Source: Sphaerodactylus townsendi
Lineage: Eukaryota
Direction of reading: 5' to 3'
Length of the DNA stretch: 64,000 nucleotides
Assembly: GCF_021028975.2 (NCBI RefSeq)
Contig: NC_059440.1
Span: forward strand, 17,546,001 to 17,610,000
Notes under the pieces: generated by a model
Databases searched by the model: none
Seen by the model: only the letters and a program-made list of their open reading frames with translations
Told to the model about the DNA's origin: nothing
Shown: one piece after another, positions 74 to 63,029 of the stretch
Layout of the letters: every line of letters starts with the position of its first letter
How positions within the stretch are numbered: position 1 is the stretch's first letter
Translations under genes and position numbers: made by a program

Positions 74-8297
<8,224 letters not shown>

Positions 8298-8302
<5 letters not shown>

Positions 8303-8377
8303 AGTTTGGCGTGTGGGGAAGCTATCCCAGTGCTGCGGGTTTCTGCTTATCGCGTTTAATCCCGAGTTAATAATAAA
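8298..8377 (+). terminator. Candidate ASL polyadenylation signals
   Basis: AATAAA at 8298-8303 (overlaps the stop codon) and at 8372-8377, each followed by GT-rich sequence. Confidence 0.6.
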
Positions 8378-8850
8378 TAACAGTGGTGTATTGGATTTCA
8401 CTGAGGAAAAGAAAAGAAAAGCTTGTTGCGTGGTTTCTTCCGGATACGCTCGTCCCCCAAGGAGGAGAGGGGTGAGAAGGCATTTCAGCAGCTTGCCTGG
8501 GGTTCAGTCTTGTGCGTTTTGTTCCTGCTCTTGGTTTTCTAAACCATTCTTAGGGCTTAACTCCTGGACACAGAGTCACTGCGGGGGTGGAAAGCACCAT
8601 CAAGTTGCATCAGGTTTTTCTAGGCAAGATTCAGAGGTGGTTTGCCATTGCCTAGCTCTGTATAGCACCCTTGGGCTTCCTTAGTAGTCTCCCATTCAAG
8701 TACATCAGCAGTGGTGTAGTGGTTAAAAGCAGGTGCACTCTAACCTGGAAAACTAGGTTTGATTCCCTGCTCTGCCACTTGAGCTTATCTGGGGAACTAG
8801 ATTAGCCTTTGCACTCCAGCACACACCAGCTGGGTGACCTTGGGCTAGTC

Positions 8851-9286
8851 CAGGGGTAGGGAACCTGCGGCTCGAGAGCCGCATGCGGCTCTTCTGCCCT
8901 TGCACTGCGGCTCCACGAGCCGAGCCGCCGGCCGCATCCTTGCCCGCCCTGCAGGCAGCAGGACGGGCACACCAATTGCCTGCGGCCAGCTGGGCCATGC
9001 TGCTGGGCGTGAAGCTTCCCTCTCTCGCCCGGCTTGGTTTTGGAGCAGGGTGGGTGCTTTCCAGCTGCCGGGCGAGGCCGTGAGAAACTAGCTGGCCCCA
9101 TCCTTGCCCGCCCTGCAGGCAGCAGGGTGAACGCTTCCATGCGCTTCTCAGAATGAGCGGAGTAAAAGGTAAAAAACCCCAATATATACAGTATTATCTT
9201 TATTTTAAATGTCAAAAATTATTTGCGGCTCCAAGTGTTTCTTTTCCTGTGGAAAACGGGTCCAAATGGCTCTTTCCCTACCCCTG
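8851..9286. mobile_element. Non-autonomous hAT transposon nested in a SINE
   Basis: TIR CAGGGGTAGGGAA/TTCCCTACCCCTG; TSD GGCTAGTC (8843-8850, 9287-9294). Confidence 0.9.
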
Positions 9287-10607
9287 GGCTAGTCACAGCT
9301 CTTCGGAGCTCTCTCAGCCACACCAACATCACAGCCACATCTCAGCCACACCCACATCACAGATGTTTGTTGTTGAGGGGGTGGGGGAGGAAAGGAGATT
9401 GTAAGCCCCTTTGATTCTCCTTACAGGAGAGAAAGGGGGTTATAAATCCAAACTCCTCTTCCTTTTCTAATCTGGGTTGACCCTCCTTGCTTCCCAAGAT
9501 AGAGTGCGATTGGGTTAGCTTGGGCCATCCAAGCCAGAGCAATAGTTTTAGCCAGCAGTAATTCACCAAATGGTTACATGGACAGCGTGGTAGGTTTGCA
9601 TGTTGGAGGTGTGGCTCAAAGGCAGAGCATCTGCTCTACATGCAGGTGACCCTTACAGGAGCCTCCCTCAAATCCTGGGGAAAGGGAGCCTAGTCCAGGT
9701 ATACGTAAGCACAATCCTCAAACAATATATCCCGTAGAACTATGAAATGGGATAGAAGAACAACAACAGCAACGTGAGTTGAACCAGACTAAATTTTACT
9801 GACATATGAAACACAGCAAGGAAACATTCCAAAGGCAGTGTAAACTGAACAACAAGCTAAATGCAGAATCACACCCAAAAAAAGTTTTGGAAAGTAAATT
9901 CTAAAGAATGCAGGATCACAAAGGGGGAAATAAGCAAAACTTGATGGAAGACATCGTCAGGATGCTAGAAGCGCTGTTTCACAGATTACACTTGGAACTG
10001 AACATTCTCCTGGCTTTGATACACAGGTATGGTAGTCCCAGAAGGAAAGGTGAGGAGTGTTTCAAGCAAGAAGCGGGATCACAGTCTTCTCTGGACAGAA
10101 TTTGGGGAGGGGAACTGGACTGGAGAACAGGGAGGCTGTGCTTACGTTGCAAGTTGAAGAGTAGAAGAGGCAGGTTATTCTGAACTCCATTGATGGAGGA
10201 AGAAGAGTTGGCTTATATACCTCACCTTTCTCTATCTTAAAGGAGTCTCAAAACAGCTTACAATCACCCTCCTTTCCCCTCCCCATAGCAAACACCTTGT
10301 ATGGTAGGTGGGGCTGAGAGGGTCTGGAAAGAACTATGACTTACCAAGGCCACTCAGCAGGCTTCACGTGGAGGAGCAGGGAAAACTAATCTTGTATCAC
10401 CAGATTAGTCTTCGCCACTCATGTGGAGAAGTGGGGAATCAAACCTGGTTCTCTGGATTAGAGTTTGCCACTCTTAACCACTATGGCATGCCGGCTCTCC
10501 TGGAGTGGAACTGAACTAAATTTGCTAGCATCATGTTAACCTGCCTTCTTAGGTTATTGGTCATGAACAGGTATGCCTCACAAACGACAACTATTGTTTA
10601 TTTGGGT

Positions 10608-10825: not shown

Positions 10826-11408
10826 CTTGCAGCAGTGATCATATACCATACTAAAGTAAAGAACAGTGCAGGAATTTAAGCAAAAGAAGGGTTTGCTTGC
10901 TCTTGTGAATGTGGTCCTTAAAATCAGGATGTGCGAGAGAATTTACGGTCAAGTGGGAAAGGGACCGATCATAGGCTGGACATACGTATAAAATGATAAC
11001 TTAGCCTAGACTGATACGTACAAAAACATACACTAAATATTATCAAGTGACAATTATCAAGTGACAAAACATAGCAATAGTTGCGTTTTTTTTTAAAAAT
11101 GGCAAGAATGGTGTAAAAACCCTTTCCCCAGATTAACTGCAACACAGATCCTGTACAAATTAAATGACATCTTAAACTCATTCGAAAAAATAACAAATCC
11201 AAAATCATATCGTTCATAATGCGGGGAAGAATATTAACATCAGGTTCAGTAATGCTTGAAGTGGCCACACAATTGACCCTGCTGTTGTGGTTCTGGCCTC
11301 TGTACATGACGATGGCAGTACGGGATGTAGCCTGAAAATAGTGACTGAACTCCAATGACAGAGATCAATTTCCTTGGAGAAAAGGGATCTGCATAGCCTG
11401 GATTCTAT

Positions 11409-11708
11409 GAAGAAGAAGAGTTTGGATTTATATCCCCCCTTTCTCTCCTGCAAGGAGACTCAAAGGGGTTTACAATCTCCTTCCCCCCCCCCTCCCCACA
11501 ACAAACACCCTGTGAGGTGGGTGGGGCTGAGAGAGCTCCGAAGAACTCTGACTAGCCACAGGTCACCCAGCGAGCATGTGTTGGAATGCACGAGCTAATC
11601 TGGTTCACCAGATAAGCATCCACAGCTCAAGTGGCAGAGCGGAGAATCAAACCCAGTTCTCCAGATTAGAGCGCACCTGCTCTTAACCACAACACCATGC
11701 TGGCTTTC
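11409..11708 (-). mobile_element. tRNA-headed MIR/Ther1-related SINE (Squam3-like), representative full copy of the dominant family
   Basis: Head TGGTGTAGTGGTTAAGAG, core CTCAGCCCCACCYACCTCACAGGGTG, tail ATCCAAACTCTTCTTCT. Other approximate copies: 1108-1300(+), 5700-6128(+), 6920-7080(+), 8705-9468(+), 10198-10497(-), 17961-18229(-), 20661-20745(-), 25365-25668(+), 28219-28505(+), 39020-39170(+), 45221-45484(-), 48341-48624(-), 54505-54615(+), 60830-60975(+). Family name is from memory. Confidence 0.85.
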
Positions 11709-13169
11709 TACGGTATTATATACTCCTTGATGTTGGTGCTGGATTTAGATGAAGAGAGGCCCTAGGCCAAGCTATTCCACTTGTGAGGGCCCTCCCAATC
11801 CTCTACCCTCATGACCAGAGGAAGATGGAAGAGTGTTTAAAACAAAATTGAGTAAAGCCAAGGGTGTTTGAAATCCCGCAATTCACCATTTCTCCTCTGA
11901 AGGACATAAGATGTTATTGTGAAATGCCATAGTGATTGGGAAACAATGCATGAATAAAATGCACACACCTATGACCGTGTCAAAAATATTATACACCTTG
12001 GCTGGAGTCCCCCTAGATTTTGAGGCTCTAGGCTTCAGCCTGACAAGCCGAAAGGTCAATCTGACACCGCTTGATGTCCCTCAGCCTCCCGAGCCCCCAC
12101 CCAATCTCCAGGAATTTCCCAACCCAGAATTGGCAACTTTTTTATTGAAGAGGTAACTGGATGCTGAGAATACCTCCACAACTGACTCAAAGTTCCCACA
12201 ATGGAGAAAGGGACTCCTGAAACCCAACTCCTGGGCTGATTTTGCTGGCTGCATGTAATTATTGCTAGACTGCTCTGTTTTATTTATTTGTTTTTATTTA
12301 TTTCTTTTCCTTGCAGAGCTTAGGCATCGTGCAATATACACAAAACACACACAAACATGTGTATATATAATATATATAAAAACATAAATTACTAACTGGT
12401 TGCGGTGGGTCTTCTGGGCTGTGTGGCCGAGGTCTGGTAGATCTTGTTCCTAATATGTCGCCTGCATCTGCGGCTGGCATCTTCAGAGTATCATAGAGAA
12501 AAGTCTGTTTCACACTGTGTCTAGTGAGAAGGGAAAGTTTAGTGGAGTATAGTGTCCATGTCCCAGGGTGGGGAACCAGTCAGTAAGTGTTTGAGTGGAA
12601 CTTCCTATGCAAAGGTGTGGTTGAGTGCACTCTATTGCGGGTGGGGTTATCAGTCCATTTTTTAAGTACTGGTAGTCAAGCTTTGCTAATTTTCAGAGTC
12701 CCTTCTTTCTTGTTGAAGTTGTCTTGGTGTTTATGAATTTCAACGGCCTGCCTGTGCAGTCTGACATAGTAACCTTCCGAATTGTCCAGAATTTCTGTGT
12801 TCTCAAATAAAATGTTATGTCCCGTTTTGTTTAACACATGTTCTGCAACTGCAGATTTTTCAGGATGGTTAAGCCGACAGTGTCTTTTGTGCGCCTTAAT
12901 GTGAGCCTGAATGTTTCACAGTGTGAAACAGACTTTTCTCTGTGATGCACCTCTGAAGATGCCAGCCACAGATGCAGGCGACACGTTAGGAACAAGATCT
13001 ACCAGACCACAGCCACATAGCCCAGAAAACCCACAACCGTGAAAGCCTTTGACAATACATAAAAAAACAAACTTTAAAAGCAGTGTATTGTCAAAGGCTT
13101 TCATGGCTGGATTCAACTGGTTCTGGTGGGTTTTCCGGGCTGTGTGGCCGTGGTCTGGTGGATTTTGTT

Positions 13170-13210
13170 CCTAACGTTTCGCCTGCATCTGTGGCTGGCA
13201 TCTTCAGAGG
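13170..13210 (-). ncRNA. Minimal hammerhead ribozyme motif, intact core
   Basis: Exact reverse complement of 13450-13490. Confidence 0.75.
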
Positions 13211-13449
13211 TGTATCACAGAGAAAAGTCTGTTTCTCACTGTGTCTAAGTGAGAAGGGAAAGTTTAGTGTGGTATATTGTCCGTGTCCCAGGGTGGGGAA
13301 CCAATCATTAAGTGTTTGGGTGGAACTTGCTATGCAAAGGTGTGGTTGAGTGCATTGTCTTGCGGGTGGGGTTATCAGTCCATTTAATGTGCGCCTTAAT
13401 GTGAGTCAGAATGTTTCACAGTGTGAAACAGACTTTTCTCTGTGATACA

Positions 13450-13490
13450 CCTCTGAAGATGCCAGCCACAGATGCAGGCGAAACGTTAGG
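13450..13490 (+). ncRNA. Minimal type I hammerhead ribozyme motif (PLE-associated), intact core
   Basis: CCT-CTGAAGA-T-GCCAGC-CACAGAT-GCAGGC-GAAA-CG-TT-AGG: CUGANGA and GAAA boxes, helix I CCU/AGG, helix II hairpin, palindromic ACGU in place of helix III, and GUU cleavage triplet. Confidence 0.75.
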
Positions 13491-13689
13491 AACAAAATCC
13501 TCCAGACCGTGGCCACACAGCCCAGAAAACGCTCCAGAACCAGTTTAAAGTCAGTGTTTAGAATGGTAGCAAGTAATTATTGTTAGACTATGTTTTATTT
13601 GTCTCACACTATCGGTCAGGCCGGTCCAAAGTCCAGCCTGTGCACAAATAAAATTGTTGGATCACAGAAACGCACCAAGGCAAAGCCCT

Positions 13690-13831
13690 GGCAAGCCCTC
13701 AAGCAAGATGGCCGCAGCGGGCACTTGTAACCAGGGGGAGGGAGAGGACAGTCATTGGCTCTTGACAGTCAGCTGAGCTGGAGATCAGCTGACCTCCTTC
13801 CAGGGTGCAGAGTCCTGGCTGCAAGCGAAGC
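13690..13831 (+). promoter_or_regulatory. GUSB proximal promoter / 5'UTR
   Basis: GC-rich stretch before the ATG. YY1-like CAAGATGGCCGC at 13704-13715, ATTGG at 13754-13758, and two TCAGCTGA E-boxes at 13769-13776 and 13785-13792. Confidence 0.5.
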
Positions 13832-16800
13832 ATGGTTTTGCTGGCGCTCGTGGTGTGCCTGGTGCTGGGATGGAGCCCGGCCCTGGCCCTGGAAGGAGGG
13901 ATGCTCTATCCTCGGGAATCGCCCTCCAGGGAGCTGAAGGACCTCAGCGGCCTCTGGAGCTTCCGAGCCGACCGGTCCGAGCGAAGGGATGCGGGCTTTG
14001 TGCAGCGGTGGTATGAGCAGCCGCTCCGGCAGGTGAGTAGGCAGTCCTGGCTTGCAGAGAGAGAGAGGGGTTCCAGCCCTGCAACCTTATGGGGAACTGT
14101 CCATGGTGATTTCCTTTCGAAGGAACTGCAATCTGTACATGCTTCAGAGCTTTCTCATCTTTCTGAGTGCCTGTGTGTTCTAGAGGCAAGCCCAGAGTTC
14201 AGATTCAGGGTGGAGGTAGCAGCGAGGTAGCCTGCCTCTGTCCATGGAGGTTCTATTTAGGTATCCTATCACCGCTAGACCATTGGCAGTTGCCACACCG
14301 AGCCTCATTGGTGACCATCCTCTGTTTCTCAGGACGGGCACTCTGTCCTTGATAATTTCTATTTATCTGTTACATTTTCTGCTTCCTTCAAGAGCTTACA
14401 GCAGCACATGTCTCCATTTTGTCCTGACAGCTTTGTGGGGTTCTAGCCCTGCTGCCTTGTGGGGTGAAAGGTGACTTCCTTTTAGAAAGAACACCACTTT
14501 GATTTTCGGGGTCTTTGGGGCAGTGCAGGTCTCCTGACCTACATCACAGCAGCCTGGCTGGCCCTGACCGGACCAAGAATATCCAGCCCAGCTCCCTGCT
14601 TCCCACAGGAGCCATCAGAATCTCCAAAATTGTCCACAAGCAAGGCAGGATTGCCACAGTTCCCGTTTGCTGTCTTTGGCAAATATCCCCACCCTTTGAA
14701 AGGGAACCTTGGGGTCTTGGCTGCTGCTAAATTCATTCCAATCAAGCCAGGAGCAGAAAAGGCCAATTGCTCTTTCCTTCAGCTGTTCTGGAAAGAGGAA
14801 GTGAAGCCCTTCAGCGGTTTCTGTGCAGCGGAAAAAGGCAAAACCACAAAGCTGGAGAAATGTTGCTTCTCAGTAAGAAACACCCTCATATGCCTGTGAG
14901 TCAGGACAGAAAAAAATTGGGGGGGGGGGGAGGGAATTGCAAGTCAGGACATTATTTCCAGCAAGGTTATTGTAATGCAAAGTTAAGAACATCAGAACTT
15001 GCCTGCTGGATCAGACCAGAGTCCATCTAGTCCAGCTCTCTGCTACTTGCAGTGGCCCACCAGGTGCCTTTGGGAGCTCACGTGCAGGAGGTGAAAGCAA
15101 TGGCCTTCTGCTGCTGCTGTTATAAGTTATAACACTTTTAAAAATGGTATAGTGTATTAGATTACTATCTACTTTATCACCCTTTACTATTTACATTTTA
15201 GGCTCTGGGTACACTCCAAAAAGTGTTAAGGAATGTCCTAGACTTCAAAATCAAACTTTCTTTTTGTAGCAGTGCAGCAAAGGCAGGTCTGCGCCATCAA
15301 ATGGCCACTTGACAGTGGGAAGCGCCTTTCCACGATCCTGTGTCGGCCTGGAGGTAAAGACAGGAGCACAGCTGGCAAGAAAAGTTGGCAGACCTACAGA
15401 GCGATGAAACTGATCTGGCGGGAGTCCCTTGCTTTGGAGATCGCTGCAAAGCTAGCCGGAGCAGAGGAGCCGTTCTGCCCTAACGTATGACTTTCTCTTT
15501 CAGTCTGGCCCGGTGATTGACATGCCGGTCCCTGCCAGCTTCAACGAGATCACTCAGGATCCCAATCTGCGAACGTATGTCGGCTGGGTTTGGTACGAGA
15601 AGGAGGTGATCCTGCCCGCCCGCTGGCTCCAGAAGGAGGCTCGGACACGTGTGGTGCTTCGGATCGGGAGCGCTCACTACTACTCGATCGTCGTGAGTCC
15701 AGGGGAAAACATTTTGACACACTGAAAATTGCGTACCTGTGCAAGGCCGGCTTTAGTGTTTGAAGGGAGGGGCTAAGGTGCCCTCCAGTGCCCATTCACT
15801 AAGCATGCAGCCCTCAGACACAGCAGAGCCTGACCTTTTCATGTTGACTGAAGCTCCAGTGATGCTGGAACAGCTCAGAGGAGCTCACTGTAGGTCTGTC
15901 TCCAGGCACAAAATGGCTGATGACCCCCAAAGCCTCCGTGACAATCCCCTATTCCTGGAGTACAAGGATGGGCCCAGAACTCTGGCTCTTCCCGGTGTAG
16001 GCTTGGCAGATTCCCCAACAAGGCGATCCTTGTCACCAGCTGGAGAAATGGGGGTCCTTGATTCTCCCCATAAAGCTTGGCTCCCCAGATTCCAGAACGG
16101 TCACATTTTTGCAGATAAAGATCCAATCACACGTCACATATCCTAGCTGATAGATCAATGAAGGTGACTTCAGGGCATATTCAGACATGCACAAATTGTA
16201 TGCATTTATTTTATCATTTGATTTACTAGGGCTCTGGGTGGTGTACAAAGGATAAAACAATTACAAAGTCACAACTAGCAATTAAAACAGAATAAATTTT
16301 AAATACAATAAACCAGCAAAAAGCAGAAAACCTAGCATTGCATGGCAACCCAGAAAAATCTCTAACCCCCTGGGAGGGGACCAGGCACAGCAAACGATGG
16401 CCAATTAGGATGGTATATATATAGGGGGGTGGCGTGGGAGGCAATCAGCAACACCCCCCCCCCCAAAGCCCAGGGAAACAATAGAACCAGGGGGCATACA
16501 TTGAAAATGCTGGGGGGAAGAATTAGGACTGGGGGGAAGAATTAGGATAAAAGGAAACACTTCTTCATGCAACGTGTGATTGGTGTTTGGAATATGCTGC
16601 CACAGGAGGTGGTGATGGCCACTAACCTGGATAGCTTTAAAAAGGGCTTGGACAGATTGATGGAGGAGAAGTCGATCTATTGCTACCAATCTTGATCCTC
16701 CTTGATCTGAGGTTGCAAATGCCTTAGCAGACCAGGTGCTTGGGAGCAGCAACAGCAGAAGGCCCTTGCTTTCACATCCTGCATGTGAGCTCCCAAAGGC

Positions 16801-19800: not shown

Positions 19801-22800
19801 CGTCATCCTGTATACAACACCTTCGGCCTACATCGATGACATCACCGTGACCACAGACTTGGCAGAAAACGTTGGTAGGTTGTGCGCTTTTGCAGTTCAT
19901 GGAAGTCCAAGATGGGGTGGGGGTTTGAAATAAGAATCATAGAGCTGGACGACATCACAAGGGCCATCAAGTCCAACCCCCTGTCATGCAGGAACACACA
20001 ATCAAAGCACTCTCAACATATGTTCATCCAGCCTCTGTTTAAAAACTTCCAAAGGAGACTCCACCACTCTCCAAGGCAGTGAATTCCACCGTCGAAGAGG
20101 CCTGACAGTTATAAAGTTCTTCCTAATGTTTAGGGGGAATGTCTTTTCCTGCACCTTGAATCCATTACTCCATGTCCTAGTCTCTGAGGCAGCAGAAAAC
20201 AAGCTTGCTCCCTCTTCGACATGACATCCCTCCAAACATAACTATATCATGTTCCCCCTTAACCTTCACTTCTCCAGACAAAACATTCCCAGCTCCTAAG
20301 GGTGTTTCCAGTCTTTTTTGTACAGTGACAGTCTTCAATATTGGACTGCTCTTCTGCCAAGGTGACATTTGAACCCAGGACTTCCTTGTAGTCACTCAAC
20401 CCCCTCTTTTTCCTTCGGATCAGGTTTGGTACAGTATTTGATCTCGGTACGGGGAAGCTCTCGCTATTCCCTGACTCTAACTTTGCAAGATAGAGAAGGA
20501 GTGGTGGTGGCTACTGGAAACGCGTCAGCAGGAGGAATGAAAGTGCTGGATCCCAACCTGTGGTGGCCCTATTTGATGAACGAACAACCCGGGTACCTTT
20601 ACTACTTAGAGGTATTATATTTGGGCTTGATCGGGGGTAGGGGGGAGAGGATGCTCACGTAGAAGAAGAAGAGTTTGGATTTATATCCCCCTTTCTCTCC
20701 TGTAAGGAGACTCAAAGGGGCTTATAATCTCCTTTTCCTCCCCACTCACCTGATCCCTTGGCCCAAGCCCCGGGAACAGTTGCACATAAAATCTCCACCT
20801 GGTTAATTTGTGCAAGCAGACTTGTGCAAGCGAACACTTTCTCTATGGGGTATACAGTGGCTCACATCATGTGGGTGGGTACTGGGGGGAAAGAAGGGCT
20901 GGTGAGTGGGGGCTCATGTGCCCGGAAAGGTAATGCAAAAAGGGGCATCTTTTGGACTACAGGTTACATTATCTGCCTTTGTGGATGGAGAGGTTTTGGA
21001 AGACAAATACACACAGCCAGTCGGCTTCCGTACCGTGCAGGTCACCAGCACCCAGTTCCTCATCAACGGGAAGCCTTTTTACTTCCACGGGGTCAACAAA
21101 CACGAAGATGCTGACGTGAGTTGGGCTGGATATTTTTCCTACTAAGCCACTTGCTCAACACCAGCCGGGTACCAAAGTAAGATGCTGTACCAAAGTAAGA
21201 TGCTGTAAGGTCCTTGTCTGTATGTATTACAGACTGATAAGAAGGAATACTGGAAAATTATGTTGAAAAGAGACCTGTCCATAAACTGGTTGCGGTGGGT
21301 TTTCCGGGCTGTGTGGCCGTGGTCTAGTGGATCTTGTTCCTAATGTTTCACCTGCATCTGTGGCTGGCATTTTCAGAGGTGTATCACAGAGGGAAGTCAA
21401 CAAGATCCACCAGACCACAGCCACACAGCCCAGAAAACCCACCACAACCAGTGGTATCCGGCAGTGAAAGCCTTCGACAATACCTATCCATAAAGTCCAA
21501 CAACCTTTATAAAGGCCTCACACGCAATTGGAATCTGGAACAAGTTTAATAGTTCAGTGAGAACCAACACTTTGCCTGTTTGTTGCTGTTGATTGTTAAA
21601 ATCTATTTTATAGCTTATTTTTATCCTGTCCTTCCTCTGTGGAGGTCACAGAGCAGCATACAATGTTCTCCTTGCATTGGCTTATTTTCACAACCACCCT
21701 ATGAGATAGGATGGACTGAAAGAGAGACTGGCTCATGGTCACCCAAGCAATCTTGAAGGCAAAGTGGGGATTTGAACCCAAGATTCTGGTCCAACGCTCT
21801 ATCCAAGAGGTCCCCAATGTTGCGCTTATGGGCGTCATGGCATCTAGCAACACCTTTTCTGGCTCCCACCAAGTGTCTTTAGGGTGGGTGGGGCCAGGTA
21901 GGGCTTTTGCCCAGCAAGTCTTCTGATTGACTACTGGAGATTTAATTGGCTATGCAAATTTTTAAAATGTTGCTTTGGTAGCAGCTGCCACCACACCACA
22001 TGGATCTGCACTGTGTTACTGAAGTTAAACTGTGGCAACTATTTTGTGGCTGGCTCCCCCTCTTGCGGCAGCCATTTTGTGCTGCGGCCAACATGCTGTG
22101 TGAGAATTCCAAATGCACCCTCAGGCTCAAAAAGGTTTGGGACTCCTGCTGTATCCACTACACCACTTCAGCTCCCATGGACGAATCCATGCTCGGCATC
22201 CATTAGGGTCATGCAGTGCCCTCCTGAAACCGTGATGTAAAAATAGGGCTTTGGTTAATTCTGAGAGGGAGCTCACCGGGTTCTTTATAACACAGATTCG
22301 TGGCAAAGGACTGGACTGGTCCCTGATTATGAAGGACTTCAACCTTTTGCGCTGGCTGGGTGCCAACGCTTTTCGCACAAGCCACTACCCTTACGCTGAG
22401 GAGATCATGGAACTTTGCGATGCTTACGGCATCGTGGTAATTGACGAGTGTCCCGGAGTGGGCATGAAAGACAGGTGAGCAGTTAGATACGAGGCTCCTT
22501 TAAATATATTCCAATGTATTACAGGATTTGGTTGCAAATTGGCCTCTGGAAATAATCATTTGCCACAGAGGGACGCTGCAGGCTGGAAGAGAACTCTTTT
22601 GGTCAGGCCATTATTAGATAGAATCTTTGCTGCTCACATGAATATAAACAAGCTCTCTTAACCTGCAGATCAGCTGCTACTGTTTTTAGCTTTAAATTCT
22701 TAAACTTTAGCTTAAAACTAGTGTTTAGCTAGTTTTTAGTTTTAAATTCTTTCCATTGCTTTGAATTAACCTGGCTTCAGGGGTCTCTTGCAGAAAGGGG

Positions 22801-47394: not shown

Positions 47395-47557
47395 CTATTG
47401 TAAAAGGCTTTCATGGCCGGGTTCATTGTGGGTTTTCTGGGCTGTGCAGCCGTGGCCTTGTAGTTATTGCTCCTCATCTTTCACCCACAAGATGCCAGCC
47501 AGCCAAAGGTGCGGGTGAAAGGTCAGCAGCAAAAACTACCAGACCACAGCCACACAA
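47395..47557. mobile_element. Older, degenerate PLE terminal fragment
   Basis: tattgtaaaaggctttcatggccggg...accagaccacagccacaca matches the ends of the same family. Confidence 0.6.
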
Positions 47558-60454: not shown

Positions 60455-60590
60455 CACAGACACAGTGTGTAACAGACTTCTCACTGTGATACACCTCTGA
60501 AGATGCCAGCCACAGATGCAGGCGAAACATTAGGAACAAGATCTACCAGACCATGGCCATACAGCCCAGAAAACCCACAACAACCTGTAA
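60455..60590 (+). mobile_element. PLE terminal fragment with hammerhead motif (60494-60534)
   Basis: cctCTGAAGAtgccagccacagatgcaggcGAAAcattagg; core intact, helix III palindrome decayed. Confidence 0.75.
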
Positions 60591-61950: not shown

Positions 61951-62538
61951 AAACTCCGTGTCAACAGGCCAGGCTAGCCACTGCTTGGAAGTTCTGCATG
62001 TAGATCTTATGTTCTGAGTGGCTTCTGATAGAAAAGCACTCTGCACATGCATAGTGTTTTTACATGTTGAGCTATTTTTTGTGATACAAATAGAATGCGG
62101 TGGCTGATCTGAATTAAAATGATTGCTGTATGGAACGACTCCACGGGCAAACTTCTCAGAGTTCAGTGAAGCGGTTCAGCTTTAAAAAAAAATTATGTCA
62201 GTAGCAGAACAGTCACTTTTTATTTCTTTTTTACAATCAGTGCATGTGATGGTGGTTTGCAGTGCAGGGAAGAACGCAGGGGAAAGTGCTTTTGAAATAC
62301 AAGGCAGGAATTGGTATGCGGTAAAACCACACACACTAAGGCCCTTTCCGCACATGCAGAATAATGCACTTTCAATCCACTGAAGATTCTGTGTGGTTGG
62401 AAAGCAGCCTGCCCTGCAGGGTTGTCACGAGGGCAAACGTGAAGCAAAGGAGAGCCTTGAGACATGATAGCTTGCTTTCGTGCTTACTTGCATCCCGCAG
62501 TACACAGTACATACTAAAAAATACTGTTTCTTTCCTGA

Positions 62539-62945
62539 TTCTGGTGGGTTTTCCGGGCTGTGTGGCCGTGGTCTGGTGGATTTTGTTCCTAACGTTTCGC
62601 CTGCATCTGTGGCTGGCATCTTCAGAGCTGTATCATAGAGAAAAGTCTGTTTCACACTGTGTCTAGTGAGAAGGGAAAGTTTAGTGGGATATATTGTCCA
62701 TGTCCCAGAGTGGGAAACCAATCATTAAGTGTTTGGGTGGAACTTGCTATGCAAAGGTGTGGTTGAGTGCATTGTCTTGCAGGTGGGGTTATCAGTCCAT
62801 TTTTTTAAGTACTGGGAGCCAGGCTTTGCTAATTTTTCACAAACACCAGGACAACTTCAATAAGAAAGAAGAGACCACGGCCACGCAGCCCGGAAAACCC
62901 ATCAGAACCAGTTGAATCCGGCCGTGAAAGCCTTCGACAGTACAT
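62539..62945. mobile_element. PLE fragment with inverted arms upstream of the first PHKG1 coding exon; minus-strand hammerhead motif 62588-62628
   Basis: Same terminal repeat as above, plus an inverted HKHQDNFNKKEET endonuclease remnant at ~62838-62877. Confidence 0.8.
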
Positions 62946-63029
62946 TGTTTCTTTCCTGTTTTCCCTCACAGCATTTTGTCATCCTGAAATAAACCTCAAG
63001 AAGGTTTGGAACAGTGAAATCAGACAAAG

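What the first reader, a model, noticed from the sequence alone, without database searches (positions are those of the whole stretch)
12394..13545. Four-copy hammerhead-ribozyme cassette directly upstream of GUSB, with two same-strand copies exactly 500 nt apart
Seen: a duplicated Penelope-like unit with four 41-nt motifs. A 12449-12489(-) is degenerate; B 12950-12990(+) has GACA in place of GAAA; C 13170-13210(-) and D 13450-13490(+) are intact. Each has CUGAAGA, a helix II hairpin, GAAA, a 3-bp helix I and only the palindrome ACGU where helix III should be. Established: PLE termini carry such minimal type I hammerheads, which generally need a dimeric fold, and tandem-hammerhead retrozymes release monomers that can circularise. 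Inference: B and D both keep ACGU and lie on the ASL/GUSB sense strand, so one read-through RNA could form a double hammerhead. D's intact core would cut B's GUU site (12987/12988), while cutting at 13487/13488 would be impaired by B's mutation. That would be a self-cleaving barrier between ASL and the GUSB promoter (D ends ~340 nt before the ATG), or a decaying retrozyme-like unit. Pairing between C and D is a competing inactive fold.
Basis: partly seen in the sequence, partly recalled or inferred. Interest (0 to 1): 0.8.

Follow-up and report, generated by a model that had tools for sequence, protein, structure and literature searches.

The report
Dead Penelope retrotransposon stubs upstream of GUSB
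The four hammerhead-like motifs are real, but they are the standard end pieces of two old, truncated, inverted copies of a very abundant Penelope-like (Poseidon-type) retrotransposon, and nothing supports a ribozyme barrier between ASL and GUSB.

Summary
Observation confirmed. Four 41-nt minimal type I hammerhead motifs sit at the stated coordinates. C and D are intact, B has GACA, and A has GACA plus a lost ACGU palindrome. B and D are exactly 500 nt apart.

Interpretation not supported. The block 12394-13545 is two neighbouring head-to-head ("fold-back") 5'-truncated insertions of a Poseidon-type Penelope-like element (PLE). Each arm is the 3' end of a PLE insertion unit: pLTR end, min-HHR, then the first 90-120 nt of the ORF. 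The ORF ATG lies in stem II and the cut site is 26 nt after it, as published for Anolis Poseidon. Arms stop at one of two positions 31 nt apart, which is the published optional "tail". The minus strand of copy 1 still encodes the C-terminal endonuclease remnant.

The 500-nt spacing is a 721-725-nt copy offset minus a ~225-nt internal deletion. Three more copies lie in this window, and DNA runs show the family is massively repeated.

Any RNA across the block folds into 118-132-bp duplexes. Forcing the B:D double hammerhead costs +104 kcal/mol. ASL ends about 4 kb upstream. No RNA data were available.

The scan has already noted this family elsewhere in this genome (86 notes mention Penelope). 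One followed-up case reached the same verdict. Ordinary, already known.

The parts
12394..12916 (-). Copy 1, long half. A 5'-truncated Poseidon-type PLE read on the minus strand. It runs from the endonuclease C-terminal coding remnant (about 12679-12915) through the 3'UTR/pLTR, motif A and the ORF start, and ends at the tail-less terminus (AACCAGTT on the minus strand).
   Evidence: The translation shows by eye the pattern HxRHCRL..PEKSA.AEH...GH.ILFENT..LD.S..Y.VRLHR.A.EIHKH.DNFN.KE, also seen near the C-terminus of Poseidon_Ac_1p. Pfam found nothing in this 79-aa fragment. The arm was defined.
12449..12489 (-). Motif A. A degenerate min-HHR with GACA, AUAU in place of ACGU, and ACU in place of CCU in helix I.
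12917..13059 (+). Copy 1, short inverted half. It holds the pLTR end, motif B, the ORF start and the tail, ending ...GACAATACA. A ~16-nt deletion lies before the tail.
   Evidence: Inverted repeats I4/I6; tail pattern; by-eye homology to the first ~118 nt of Poseidon_Ac.
12950..12990 (+). Motif B. A min-HHR with GAAA changed to GACA (A13C). The putative cut site is 12987/12988.
13060..13083 (.). AT-rich 24-nt spacer, which is target DNA between the two tail-bearing ends. With the two tails it forms the hairpin that Rfam weakly scored as miRNA-like.
   Evidence: I7
13084..13416 (-). Copy 2, long half. It holds the tail (13084-13114), the arm with motif C, the pLTR/3'UTR (13244-13387) and a 29-nt endonuclease remnant. 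It lacks the equivalent of about 12661-12887.
   Evidence: (D2, D3)
13170..13210 (-). Motif C, an intact min-HHR.
13417..13545 (+). Copy 2, short inverted half. It holds the pLTR end, motif D and the ORF start, and ends at the tail-less terminus AACCAGTT.
   Evidence: I1: 132 nt, 94% complementary to 13112-13243
13450..13490 (+). Motif D, an intact min-HHR. The PLE ORF ATG is at 13459-13461 inside stem II. The putative cut site 13487/13488 is 26 nt after the ATG.
   Evidence: PMC11167929
12245..12284 (+). Left copy of a ~40-nt direct repeat that flanks the whole block. Unexplained.
   Evidence: local score 23 against shuffle mean 9.8, max 16
13563..13600 (+). Right copy of the same flanking repeat.

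Best explanation
The 1.15-kb block is two adjacent, old, dead insertions of a Poseidon-type Penelope-like retrotransposon.

Each insertion is the inverted, 5'-truncated structure that PLE integration typically leaves. A longer 5'-truncated copy sits on one strand. It is joined head-to-head to a ~130-160-nt copy of the same 3' terminal segment on the other strand, so both outer ends are reverse-transcription start ends.

Each of the four arms therefore carries the family's minimal hammerhead, which sits at the pLTR/ORF junction. Each arm stops at one of two alternative RT-initiation positions, with or without the 31-nt tail, and each copy has a tail at one end only.

- Shown: the motifs, the arm structure, the homology to Anolis Poseidon, dispersed copies with 11-13-bp target-site duplications, and presence of the D-side junction in two related organisms.
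- Inferred: that the structure arose by priming on both DNA strands, and that copy 2 landed beside copy 1's tail because PLE endonuclease prefers AT-rich sites or its own tail.

The motifs are most likely inert here. Any transcript through the block would form long perfect-ish hairpins (A:B, and C:D or B:C) that sequester every hammerhead core.
For: 1. Structure. Inverted arms of 118-132 nt at 92-94% complementarity. The two copies share direct homology, and copy 2 lacks ~225 nt.

2. Homology to the Repbase Poseidon_Ac sequence printed in PMC11167929 supplement 3.
- In tandem, the element's end ...CCUCUGAGG followed by ATGCCTGCC... gives the same HHR layout.
- The arm downstream of the motif matches ORF nt 1-118, including ...GAAAGCCTTCGACAA-ACA at the tail end.
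- The minus-strand translation of 12679-12915 matches the C-terminal GIY-YIG region.

3. [quoted passage not shown]

4. Ends.
- Tail-less ends: 12394, 13545, 21284.
- Ends with the 31-nt tail: 13059, 13084, 21483 and 62943/62944.

5. Dispersed family.
- Further copies lie at 21284-21483, 60458-60590 and 62538-62944, with an older one at about 47396-47556.
- Target-site duplications: 13/13 bp at 62525-62537 / 62946-62958, and 10/11 bp at 21274-21284 / 21483-21493.
- Summed contig depth over the arms is 10^4-10^5 times that of the unique flanks in four DNA runs. This is a rough indicator only.

6. Age. The copies are 88-97% alike with CpG decay in the motif, for example GAAACATT at 60497. Contigs of two related organisms, whose flanks differ by about 2-4%, start inside arm D (13520/13521) and run into the GUSB flank.

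7. No extra conservation of the motif. Variant cells are 3.5% in the HHR, 4.2% just upstream and 9.9% downstream.

8. Folding.
- MFE is -349.6 kcal/mol with D paired 41/41 to C.
- The forced double hammerhead gives -245.3 kcal/mol.
- The bare double hammerhead is worth only -7.3 kcal/mol.
Against: - Copies 1 and 2 share exactly the same inner junction (antisense endonuclease remnant ...GAATGTTT joined to CACAGTG...). Yet copy 2 is closer to the independent copy at 62.5 kb (95.7-96.9%) than to copy 1 (92%). Two independent double-priming events should not give one junction, so some inheritance of the composite or a local event is needed and is not explained.
- The ~40-nt direct repeat flanking the whole block is also unexplained.
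- Homology to Poseidon_Ac was judged by eye from a printed sequence, not by a scored alignment. Pfam did not recognise the 79-aa endonuclease remnant.
- No RNA data exist for the locus, so 'inert' is an inference from folding and the literature.
Confidence: 0.88

Rival explanations
1. A read-through RNA from ASL forms a B+D double hammerhead, and D's core cuts at 12987/12988. This would act as a self-cleaving barrier ahead of the GUSB promoter, or as a decaying retrozyme-like unit.
For: - B and D are on the ASL/GUSB sense strand. Both keep ACGU and the 3-bp helix I, and D's core is intact.
- The trans geometry is correct for a double hammerhead (Fig. 1A logic of PMC4209133).
- Dimeric and trimeric min-HHR constructs show some cleavage in vitro.
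Against: - The double hammerhead is 104 kcal/mol above the MFE. C can free at most one of B or D at a time. With A present, both B and D are sequestered.
- Helix III would be 4 bp and helix I 3 bp, worth -7.3 kcal/mol in total.
- ASL has its stop and AATAAA about 4 kb upstream.
- Min-HHR activity in vitro is low and mostly seen at non-physiological Mg.
- For Anolis Poseidon, cleavage is not needed for insertion and no reads end at the cut site.
- The same motifs occur at many unrelated places, with 3 more copies in this window.
- It is not a head-to-tail tandem, so the retrozyme definition is not met.
Confidence: 0.03
2. The inverted composite is itself a propagating non-autonomous lineage, not just two stubs. 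A fold-back PLE derivative is copied as a unit, with both ends defined by the PLE's RT-start/tail sites. Copy 2 is a younger member that homed next to copy 1's tail.
For: - Copies 1 and 2 share the identical inner junction.
- They differ in age or subfamily. In the internal part, copy 1 has 9 private differences, copy 2 has 2, and the 62.5-kb copy has 4. Arm C is 96.9% identical to the 62.5-kb arm but 89.7-93.2% to arms A and B.
- Both outer ends of both copies fall exactly on the two canonical termini.
- There is a possible 12-bp target duplication around copy 2 (9/12: 13072-13083 against 13543-13554).
- Many first-stage notes in this genome describe palindromic Penelope mini-elements.
Against: - Only two copies share the junction, and they are neighbours, so a local DNA-level event is an alternative.
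- The other composites in the window (21.3 kb, 62.5 kb) have different junctions, as expected if each forms de novo.
- A follow-up on another piece of this genome rejected a self-propagating element (s1-740868).
- No mechanism is known that would fix the 5' end of an RNA-templated copy at the antisense of an RT start site.
Confidence: 0.2
3. The block matters as a long inverted repeat rather than as a ribozyme. If transcribed, it gives 120-130-bp dsRNA hairpins about 290 nt upstream of the GUSB ATG. These could feed small-RNA or editing pathways, or influence the promoter.
For: - Predicted hairpins are very stable (MFE -349.6 to -678.6 kcal/mol).
- The insertion is shared by three related organisms.
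Against: - There is no expression data.
- The same structure is predicted for all of the family's many inverted-arm copies.
- Sharing between close species is expected for any neutral old insertion.
Confidence: 0.05

Closest known systems
Poseidon_Ac / PAc, the Poseidon-clade Penelope-like element of Anolis carolinensis (Arkhipova 2006; PMC11167929)
   Same: - The HHR sits at the pLTR/ORF junction.
[quoted passage not shown]
- The ORF start (MPA.DAGE..., ORF 12298-12513) and the C-terminal endonuclease remnant are recognisably homologous.
- The termini fall at two sites about 31 nt apart (the tail).
   Different: - The copies here are 5'-truncated, mutated stubs with no intact ORF.
- The sequence is diverged: core CUGAAGA against CUGAGGA, cleavage triplet GUU against GUC, and helix II with an A.A mismatch where Anolis has U.G.
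- They belong to another reptile's family, not to Poseidon_Ac itself.
Minimal hammerheads (min-HHR) of metazoan PLEs (Cervera & de la Pena 2014, PMC4209133)
   Same: - No helix III, with palindromic positions 15.2-16.2.
- An extra nucleotide between A9 and G10.1.
- A G10.1-C11.1 pair, a long helix II and a short helix I.
- Dual motifs 100-700 bp apart on opposite strands.
- Reported in reptiles.
   Different: - Helix I is only 3 bp, against 4-5 bp in the Schistosoma consensus. This is closer to the 2 bp of D. virilis.
- Two of the four motifs carry core mutations.
Complex tandem/inverted PLE insertions with a one-sided tail (Craig et al. 2021, PMC8557442)
   Same: - An inverted 5'-truncated copy adjoins the other copy, giving inverted repeats that flank the unit.
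- A 30-40-bp tail is present at only one end.
- Insertion is into AT-rich or microsatellite-like DNA.
   Different: There is no full-length ORF copy between the arms. Two such units sit 24 bp apart and share one inner junction.
Non-LTR retrozymes of animals (PMC7229834; bioRxiv 10.64898/2026.07.22.740005)
   Same: Type I hammerheads derived from PLE pLTRs, and non-coding short units.
   Different: - Retrozymes are head-to-tail tandem monomers with canonical type I HHRs that yield circRNAs.
- Here the same-strand motifs are separated by an antisense copy and by true insertion termini.
- No circular or cleaved RNA is shown.

Membership tests
PLE minimal hammerhead (min-HHR) | Conserved core boxes CUGANGA and GAAA | tested here: met
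   Met in C and D, and in the copy at 62591-62625. Not met in A and B, which have GACA.
PLE minimal hammerhead (min-HHR) | No helix III/loop 3, palindromic 15.2-16.2, and a cleavable NUH triplet | tested here: met
   ACGU followed by U17 (GUU) in B, C and D. A has AUAU. The descriptor scan gave 2 hits against 0 in 100 shuffles.
PLE minimal hammerhead (min-HHR) | Unpaired nucleotide between A9 and G10.1, a G10.1-C11.1 pair, and an enlarged helix II | tested here: met
   The sequence is CUGAAGA-U-GCC.GC...GC.GGC-GAAA, giving 3+2 bp around an A.A mismatch.
PLE minimal hammerhead (min-HHR) | Self-cleavage, as a dimer | not testable with these tools
   Only folding could be done. The dimer is 104 kcal/mol above the MFE in the local context. 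No RNA runs hold the locus.
Rfam hammerhead families (type I, II, III, HH9, HH10) | Reaches the covariance-model gathering score | tested here: not met
   No hammerhead hit at gathering score or at E up to 10 on 12300-13650. This is expected, because these models include helix III.
Penelope-like element, Poseidon clade | [quoted passage not shown] | tested here: inconclusive
   Only a ~70-aa C-terminal remnant survives. It resembles Poseidon_Ac_1p by eye. Pfam found nothing in it. There is no RT in the block.
Penelope-like element, Poseidon clade | HHR at the pLTR/ORF junction, with the ATG in stem II and the cut site 26 nt downstream | tested here: met
   ATG at 13459-13461 and cut site after 13487, against the statement in PMC11167929.
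Penelope-like element, Poseidon clade | 5' truncation, inverted adjacent copy, optional 30-40-bp tail at one end, and target-site duplications | tested here: met
   Target-site duplications were read. The description is in PMC8557442.
Non-LTR retrozyme | Head-to-tail tandem monomers, each with a hammerhead, so that cleavage releases unit-length RNA able to circularise | tested here: not met
   B and D are separated by an antisense arm and by two insertion termini plus a 24-nt spacer. No tandem array is present.

The most novel reading that the evidence does not exclude
The inverted composite with the shared inner junction (12916/12917 and 13416/13417) may be a self-propagating fold-back derivative of a Poseidon-type PLE. 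It would be copied as a unit, with both ends set by the element's RT-start/tail sites. Copy 2 would have homed to the tail of the older copy 1.
Probability: 0.2. Interest if true: 0.35.

Novelty: already known. Interest (0 to 1): 0.1.

Why it matters
It matters little for biology. It is one more locus of a retrotransposon family whose minimal hammerheads, inverted 5'-truncated copies and one-sided tails are all published.

Its practical value is annotation:
- The block upstream of GUSB should be masked as PLE-derived repeat.
- The miRNA-like hairpin at 13035-13108 is a tail-to-tail junction, not a gene.
- Intact-looking hammerhead cores in this genome should not be read as local regulatory ribozymes without RNA evidence.

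The only open point of some interest is whether such fold-back composites can propagate as units.

Tried and rejected
- Rfam at gathering score and at E up to 10 gave no hammerhead family. The only hits were weak miRNA-like matches to the tail-to-tail hairpin at 13035-13108. I rejected these as an artefact of two inverted tails.
- The search for RNA runs found none. The four runs laid are DNA contig sets, so they say nothing about transcription, RNA ends or cleavage. Contigs break inside the repeats, so only the D-side junction could be shown to be shared by related organisms. The left junction could not, because 12274-12388 was skipped as repeat.
- Pfam on the 79-aa endonuclease remnant gave no hit. 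My first attempt used the wrong frame.
- A simple whole-block inverted duplication was rejected. The internal parts of copies 1 and 2 are in direct, not inverted, orientation (D2).
- A recent local tandem duplication of copy 1 was considered unlikely. Copy 2 is closer to the 62.5-kb copy than to copy 1, and the tails sit at opposite ends.
- Extra conservation of the hammerhead relative to the neighbouring pLTR was not seen.
The comparison is by eye.
Full report
**What is in the sequence**

- C (13170-13210, minus) and D (13450-13490, plus) are identical. They read CCU, CUGAAGA, an extra U, a helix II of 3+2 bp around an A.A mismatch with a 7-nt loop, GAAA, CG, UU, then AGG.
- B (12950-12990, plus) has GACA.
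- A (12449-12489, minus) has GACA as well, AUAU instead of ACGU, a loop change, and ACU in place of CCU in helix I.
- The B and D cores start at 12953 and 13453, exactly 500 nt apart.
- The GUSB ATG is at 13833, 343 nt after D.
- GUSB and ASL exons were confirmed by Pfam: Glyco_hydro_2_C at 20990-21115 and Lyase_1 at 3406-3669.

The motif is not a chance match.
- A descriptor written after the published min-HHR definition found only C and D in 64 kb. It found none in 100 dinucleotide-preserving shuffles.
- Rfam's hammerhead models find nothing, at gathering score or at E up to 10. They model a helix III that this motif lacks.

**What the block is**

The repeat finder and a self-BLAST show two units, each with long inverted arms.
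- Unit 1 is 12394-13059. Its arms are 12405-12519 and 12917-13034, about 90-92% complementary.
- Unit 2 is 13084-13545. Its arms are 13112-13243 and 13417-13548, 132 nt and 94% complementary.
- The units are in direct orientation to each other and 88-92% alike.
- Unit 2 lacks about 225 nt that correspond to 12661-12887.
- The left parts are offset by 721-725 nt and the right parts by 500 nt. The 'exact 500' is therefore 725 minus a deletion and has no designed meaning.

The same repeat occurs elsewhere in the window.
- Copies lie at 21284-21483 (in a GUSB intron), 60458-60590 (a solo arm) and 62538-62944. An older, more diverged copy is at about 47396-47556.
- The 62.5-kb copy is flanked by a perfect 13-bp target-site duplication (62525-62537 and 62946-62958).
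- The 21.3-kb copy has a 10/11-bp duplication (21274-21284 and 21483-21493).

**Identity**

The Repbase Poseidon_Ac sequence of Anolis carolinensis is printed in a supplement of PMC11167929.
- Its last bases ...CCTCTGAGG followed, in tandem, by its first bases ATGCCTGCC...GGGCGAAACGTCAGG give the same hammerhead layout.
[quoted passage not shown] Here the ATG is at 13459-13461 and the cut site follows 13487, which is 26 nt.
- Downstream of the motif, the arms follow the first ~118 nt of the Poseidon ORF. Both share GGCCACACAGCCC and end in GAAAGCCTT(C/T)GACAA(T/C)ACA.
- The mechanical ORF 12298-12513 on the minus strand contains MPAADAGDILG..., against MPAIDVGETSG... in Poseidon_Ac_1p.
- The minus strand of 12679-12915 translates to a stop-free stretch. 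It shares the pattern HxRHCRL, PEKSA.AEH, GH.ILFENT, VRLHR.A.EIHKH.DNFN.KE with the C-terminal endonuclease region of Poseidon_Ac_1p.
- I made these comparisons by eye, because the published sequence could not be passed to an aligner. Pfam did not recognise the short remnant.

Unit 1 is therefore two pieces joined head-to-head.
- The first is a 523-nt 5'-truncated PLE copy on the minus strand. It runs from the endonuclease remnant through the 3'UTR/pLTR and the hammerhead to the ORF start.
- The second is a 143-nt copy of the same terminal segment on the plus strand.
- Unit 2 has the same layout.

**The ends**

Arms stop either at AACCAGTT or 31 nt further on at ...GACAATACA.
- AACCAGTT ends: 12394 and 21284 on the minus strand, 13545 on the plus strand.
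- ...GACAATACA ends: 13059, 13084, 21483 and 62943/62944.
- This is the optional 30-40-bp 'tail', which PMC11167929 maps to the interval between two reverse-transcription start sites.
- Craig et al. (PMC8557442) describe the same anatomy as typical of PLEs. It comprises strong 5' truncation, an inverted 5'-truncated copy adjacent to the unit forming inverted repeats, and a tail often present at only one end.
- Each unit here has exactly one tail. The two tails face each other across a 24-nt AT-rich spacer. That is the hairpin Rfam scored weakly as miRNA-like.
- PMC11167929 also reports that the protein cleaves and extends both DNA strands and prefers AT-rich sites or its own pLTR. This offers a mechanism for the inverted arms and for two insertions landing side by side. 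That mechanistic link is inference.

**Abundance and age**

No RNA run holds the locus. The four runs laid are DNA contig sets.
- In them the unique flanks have summed contig depth of about 30-120, while the arms reach 2-6.5 million. The tool warns this is not a copy number, but it shows a massively repeated family.
- Contigs of organism A match the flanks without a difference.
- Contigs of two related organisms differ by about 2-4% in the flanks and begin inside arm D (13520/13521) before running into the GUSB flank. The D-side junction is therefore shared and predates their split.
- Pairwise identities among arms are 87-97%.
- The CpG in ACGU has decayed in the copies at 21.3 and 60.5 kb.
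- The hammerhead is not more conserved than the adjacent pLTR. Variant cells are 3.5% in the motif, 4.2% upstream and 9.9% downstream.
- This scan has 86 notes mentioning Penelope in this genome. One followed-up case on another piece reached the same reading of dead Poseidon-type stubs.

**Would the proposed double hammerhead form?**

The context forbids it.
- RNA 12900-13550 has an MFE of -349.6 kcal/mol, with D paired 41/41 to C.
- Forcing both hammerheads with the shared 4-bp helix III and two 3-bp helices I gives at best -245.3 kcal/mol, a penalty of 104 kcal/mol.
- The bare double hammerhead is worth -7.3 kcal/mol.
- In growing transcripts B is captured by C (40/41 paired) as soon as C exists, 200 nt before D is made.
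- C can hold only one of B or D, so at most one core is free at a time, while the dimer needs both.
- In a longer read-through RNA (12300-13650), on either strand, A pairs with B and C with D, and all four motifs are sequestered.
- An isolated D folds so that its core is partly paired.
- Published assays found no activity for single min-HHRs and low activity for dimers, mostly at high Mg.
- For Anolis Poseidon, cleavage was not needed for insertion in vitro, and no RNA-seq reads ended at the cut site.
- ASL ends at 8300-8302 with AATAAA at 8372-8377. The block is 4 kb of repeats away from ASL's terminator, not between adjacent transcription units.

**What remains unexplained**

1. Units 1 and 2 share the identical inner junction.
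- Unit 2 is nevertheless closer to the independent 62.5-kb copy than to unit 1. The internal part is 95.7% against 92.2%, and arm C is 96.9% identical to that copy's arm.
- Unit 1 carries more private differences than unit 2 (9 against 2).
- Either the composite can be copied as a unit, or a local event plus uneven decay is responsible. I give the propagating fold-back reading about 0.2.

2. A ~40-nt direct repeat flanks the whole block, at 12245-12284 and 13563-13600. Its local alignment score is 23 against a shuffle maximum of 16, and it is unique in the window. I have no explanation for it.

**Verdict**

- The PLE and min-HHR identification is correct and already published for reptiles.
- The barrier and retrozyme inference is not supported.

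Noticed in passing
window 12245-12284 and 13563-13600: A ~40-nt direct repeat (about 85% identical, containing GTAATTATTG(C/T)TAGACT) flanks the whole PLE block. It lies 110 nt to the left and 18 nt to the right of the block. It is unique to these two places in the window and scores far above shuffles. Its origin is unknown: a long target duplication, a repair event, or an older repeat.
   Followed up: partly
window 12916/12917 and 13416/13417: Both PLE units have the identical junction between the antisense endonuclease remnant and the inverted arm. By sequence, however, unit 2 groups with the copy at 62.5 kb. This hints that a fold-back composite may be copied as a unit.
   Followed up: partly
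window 62837-62875: In the 62.5-kb PLE copy, a ~40-nt piece of the endonuclease coding region is inverted relative to unit 1. It is followed by an internal deletion running into the arm. This is a different inner junction from units 1 and 2.
   Followed up: partly
window 47396-47556: An older, 75-80% similar inverted pair of PLE arm fragments with a degraded tail.
   Followed up: no
window 13035-13108: A hairpin scored weakly as several miRNA families by Rfam (best 31 bits against a gathering score of 106). It is simply two inverted PLE tails around a 24-nt spacer.
   Followed up: yes
window 8680-9610, 10170-10540, 11290-11840: SINE-like repeats with extremely high summed contig depth in the DNA runs fill most of the 4 kb between the ASL poly(A) signal (8372-8377) and the PLE block.
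   Followed up: no
window 13690-13830: The putative GUSB core promoter/5'UTR has AAGATGGCCGC and an inverted CCAAT box (ATTGG). It lies about 150-280 nt downstream of the end of arm D. It was not analysed further.
   Followed up: no
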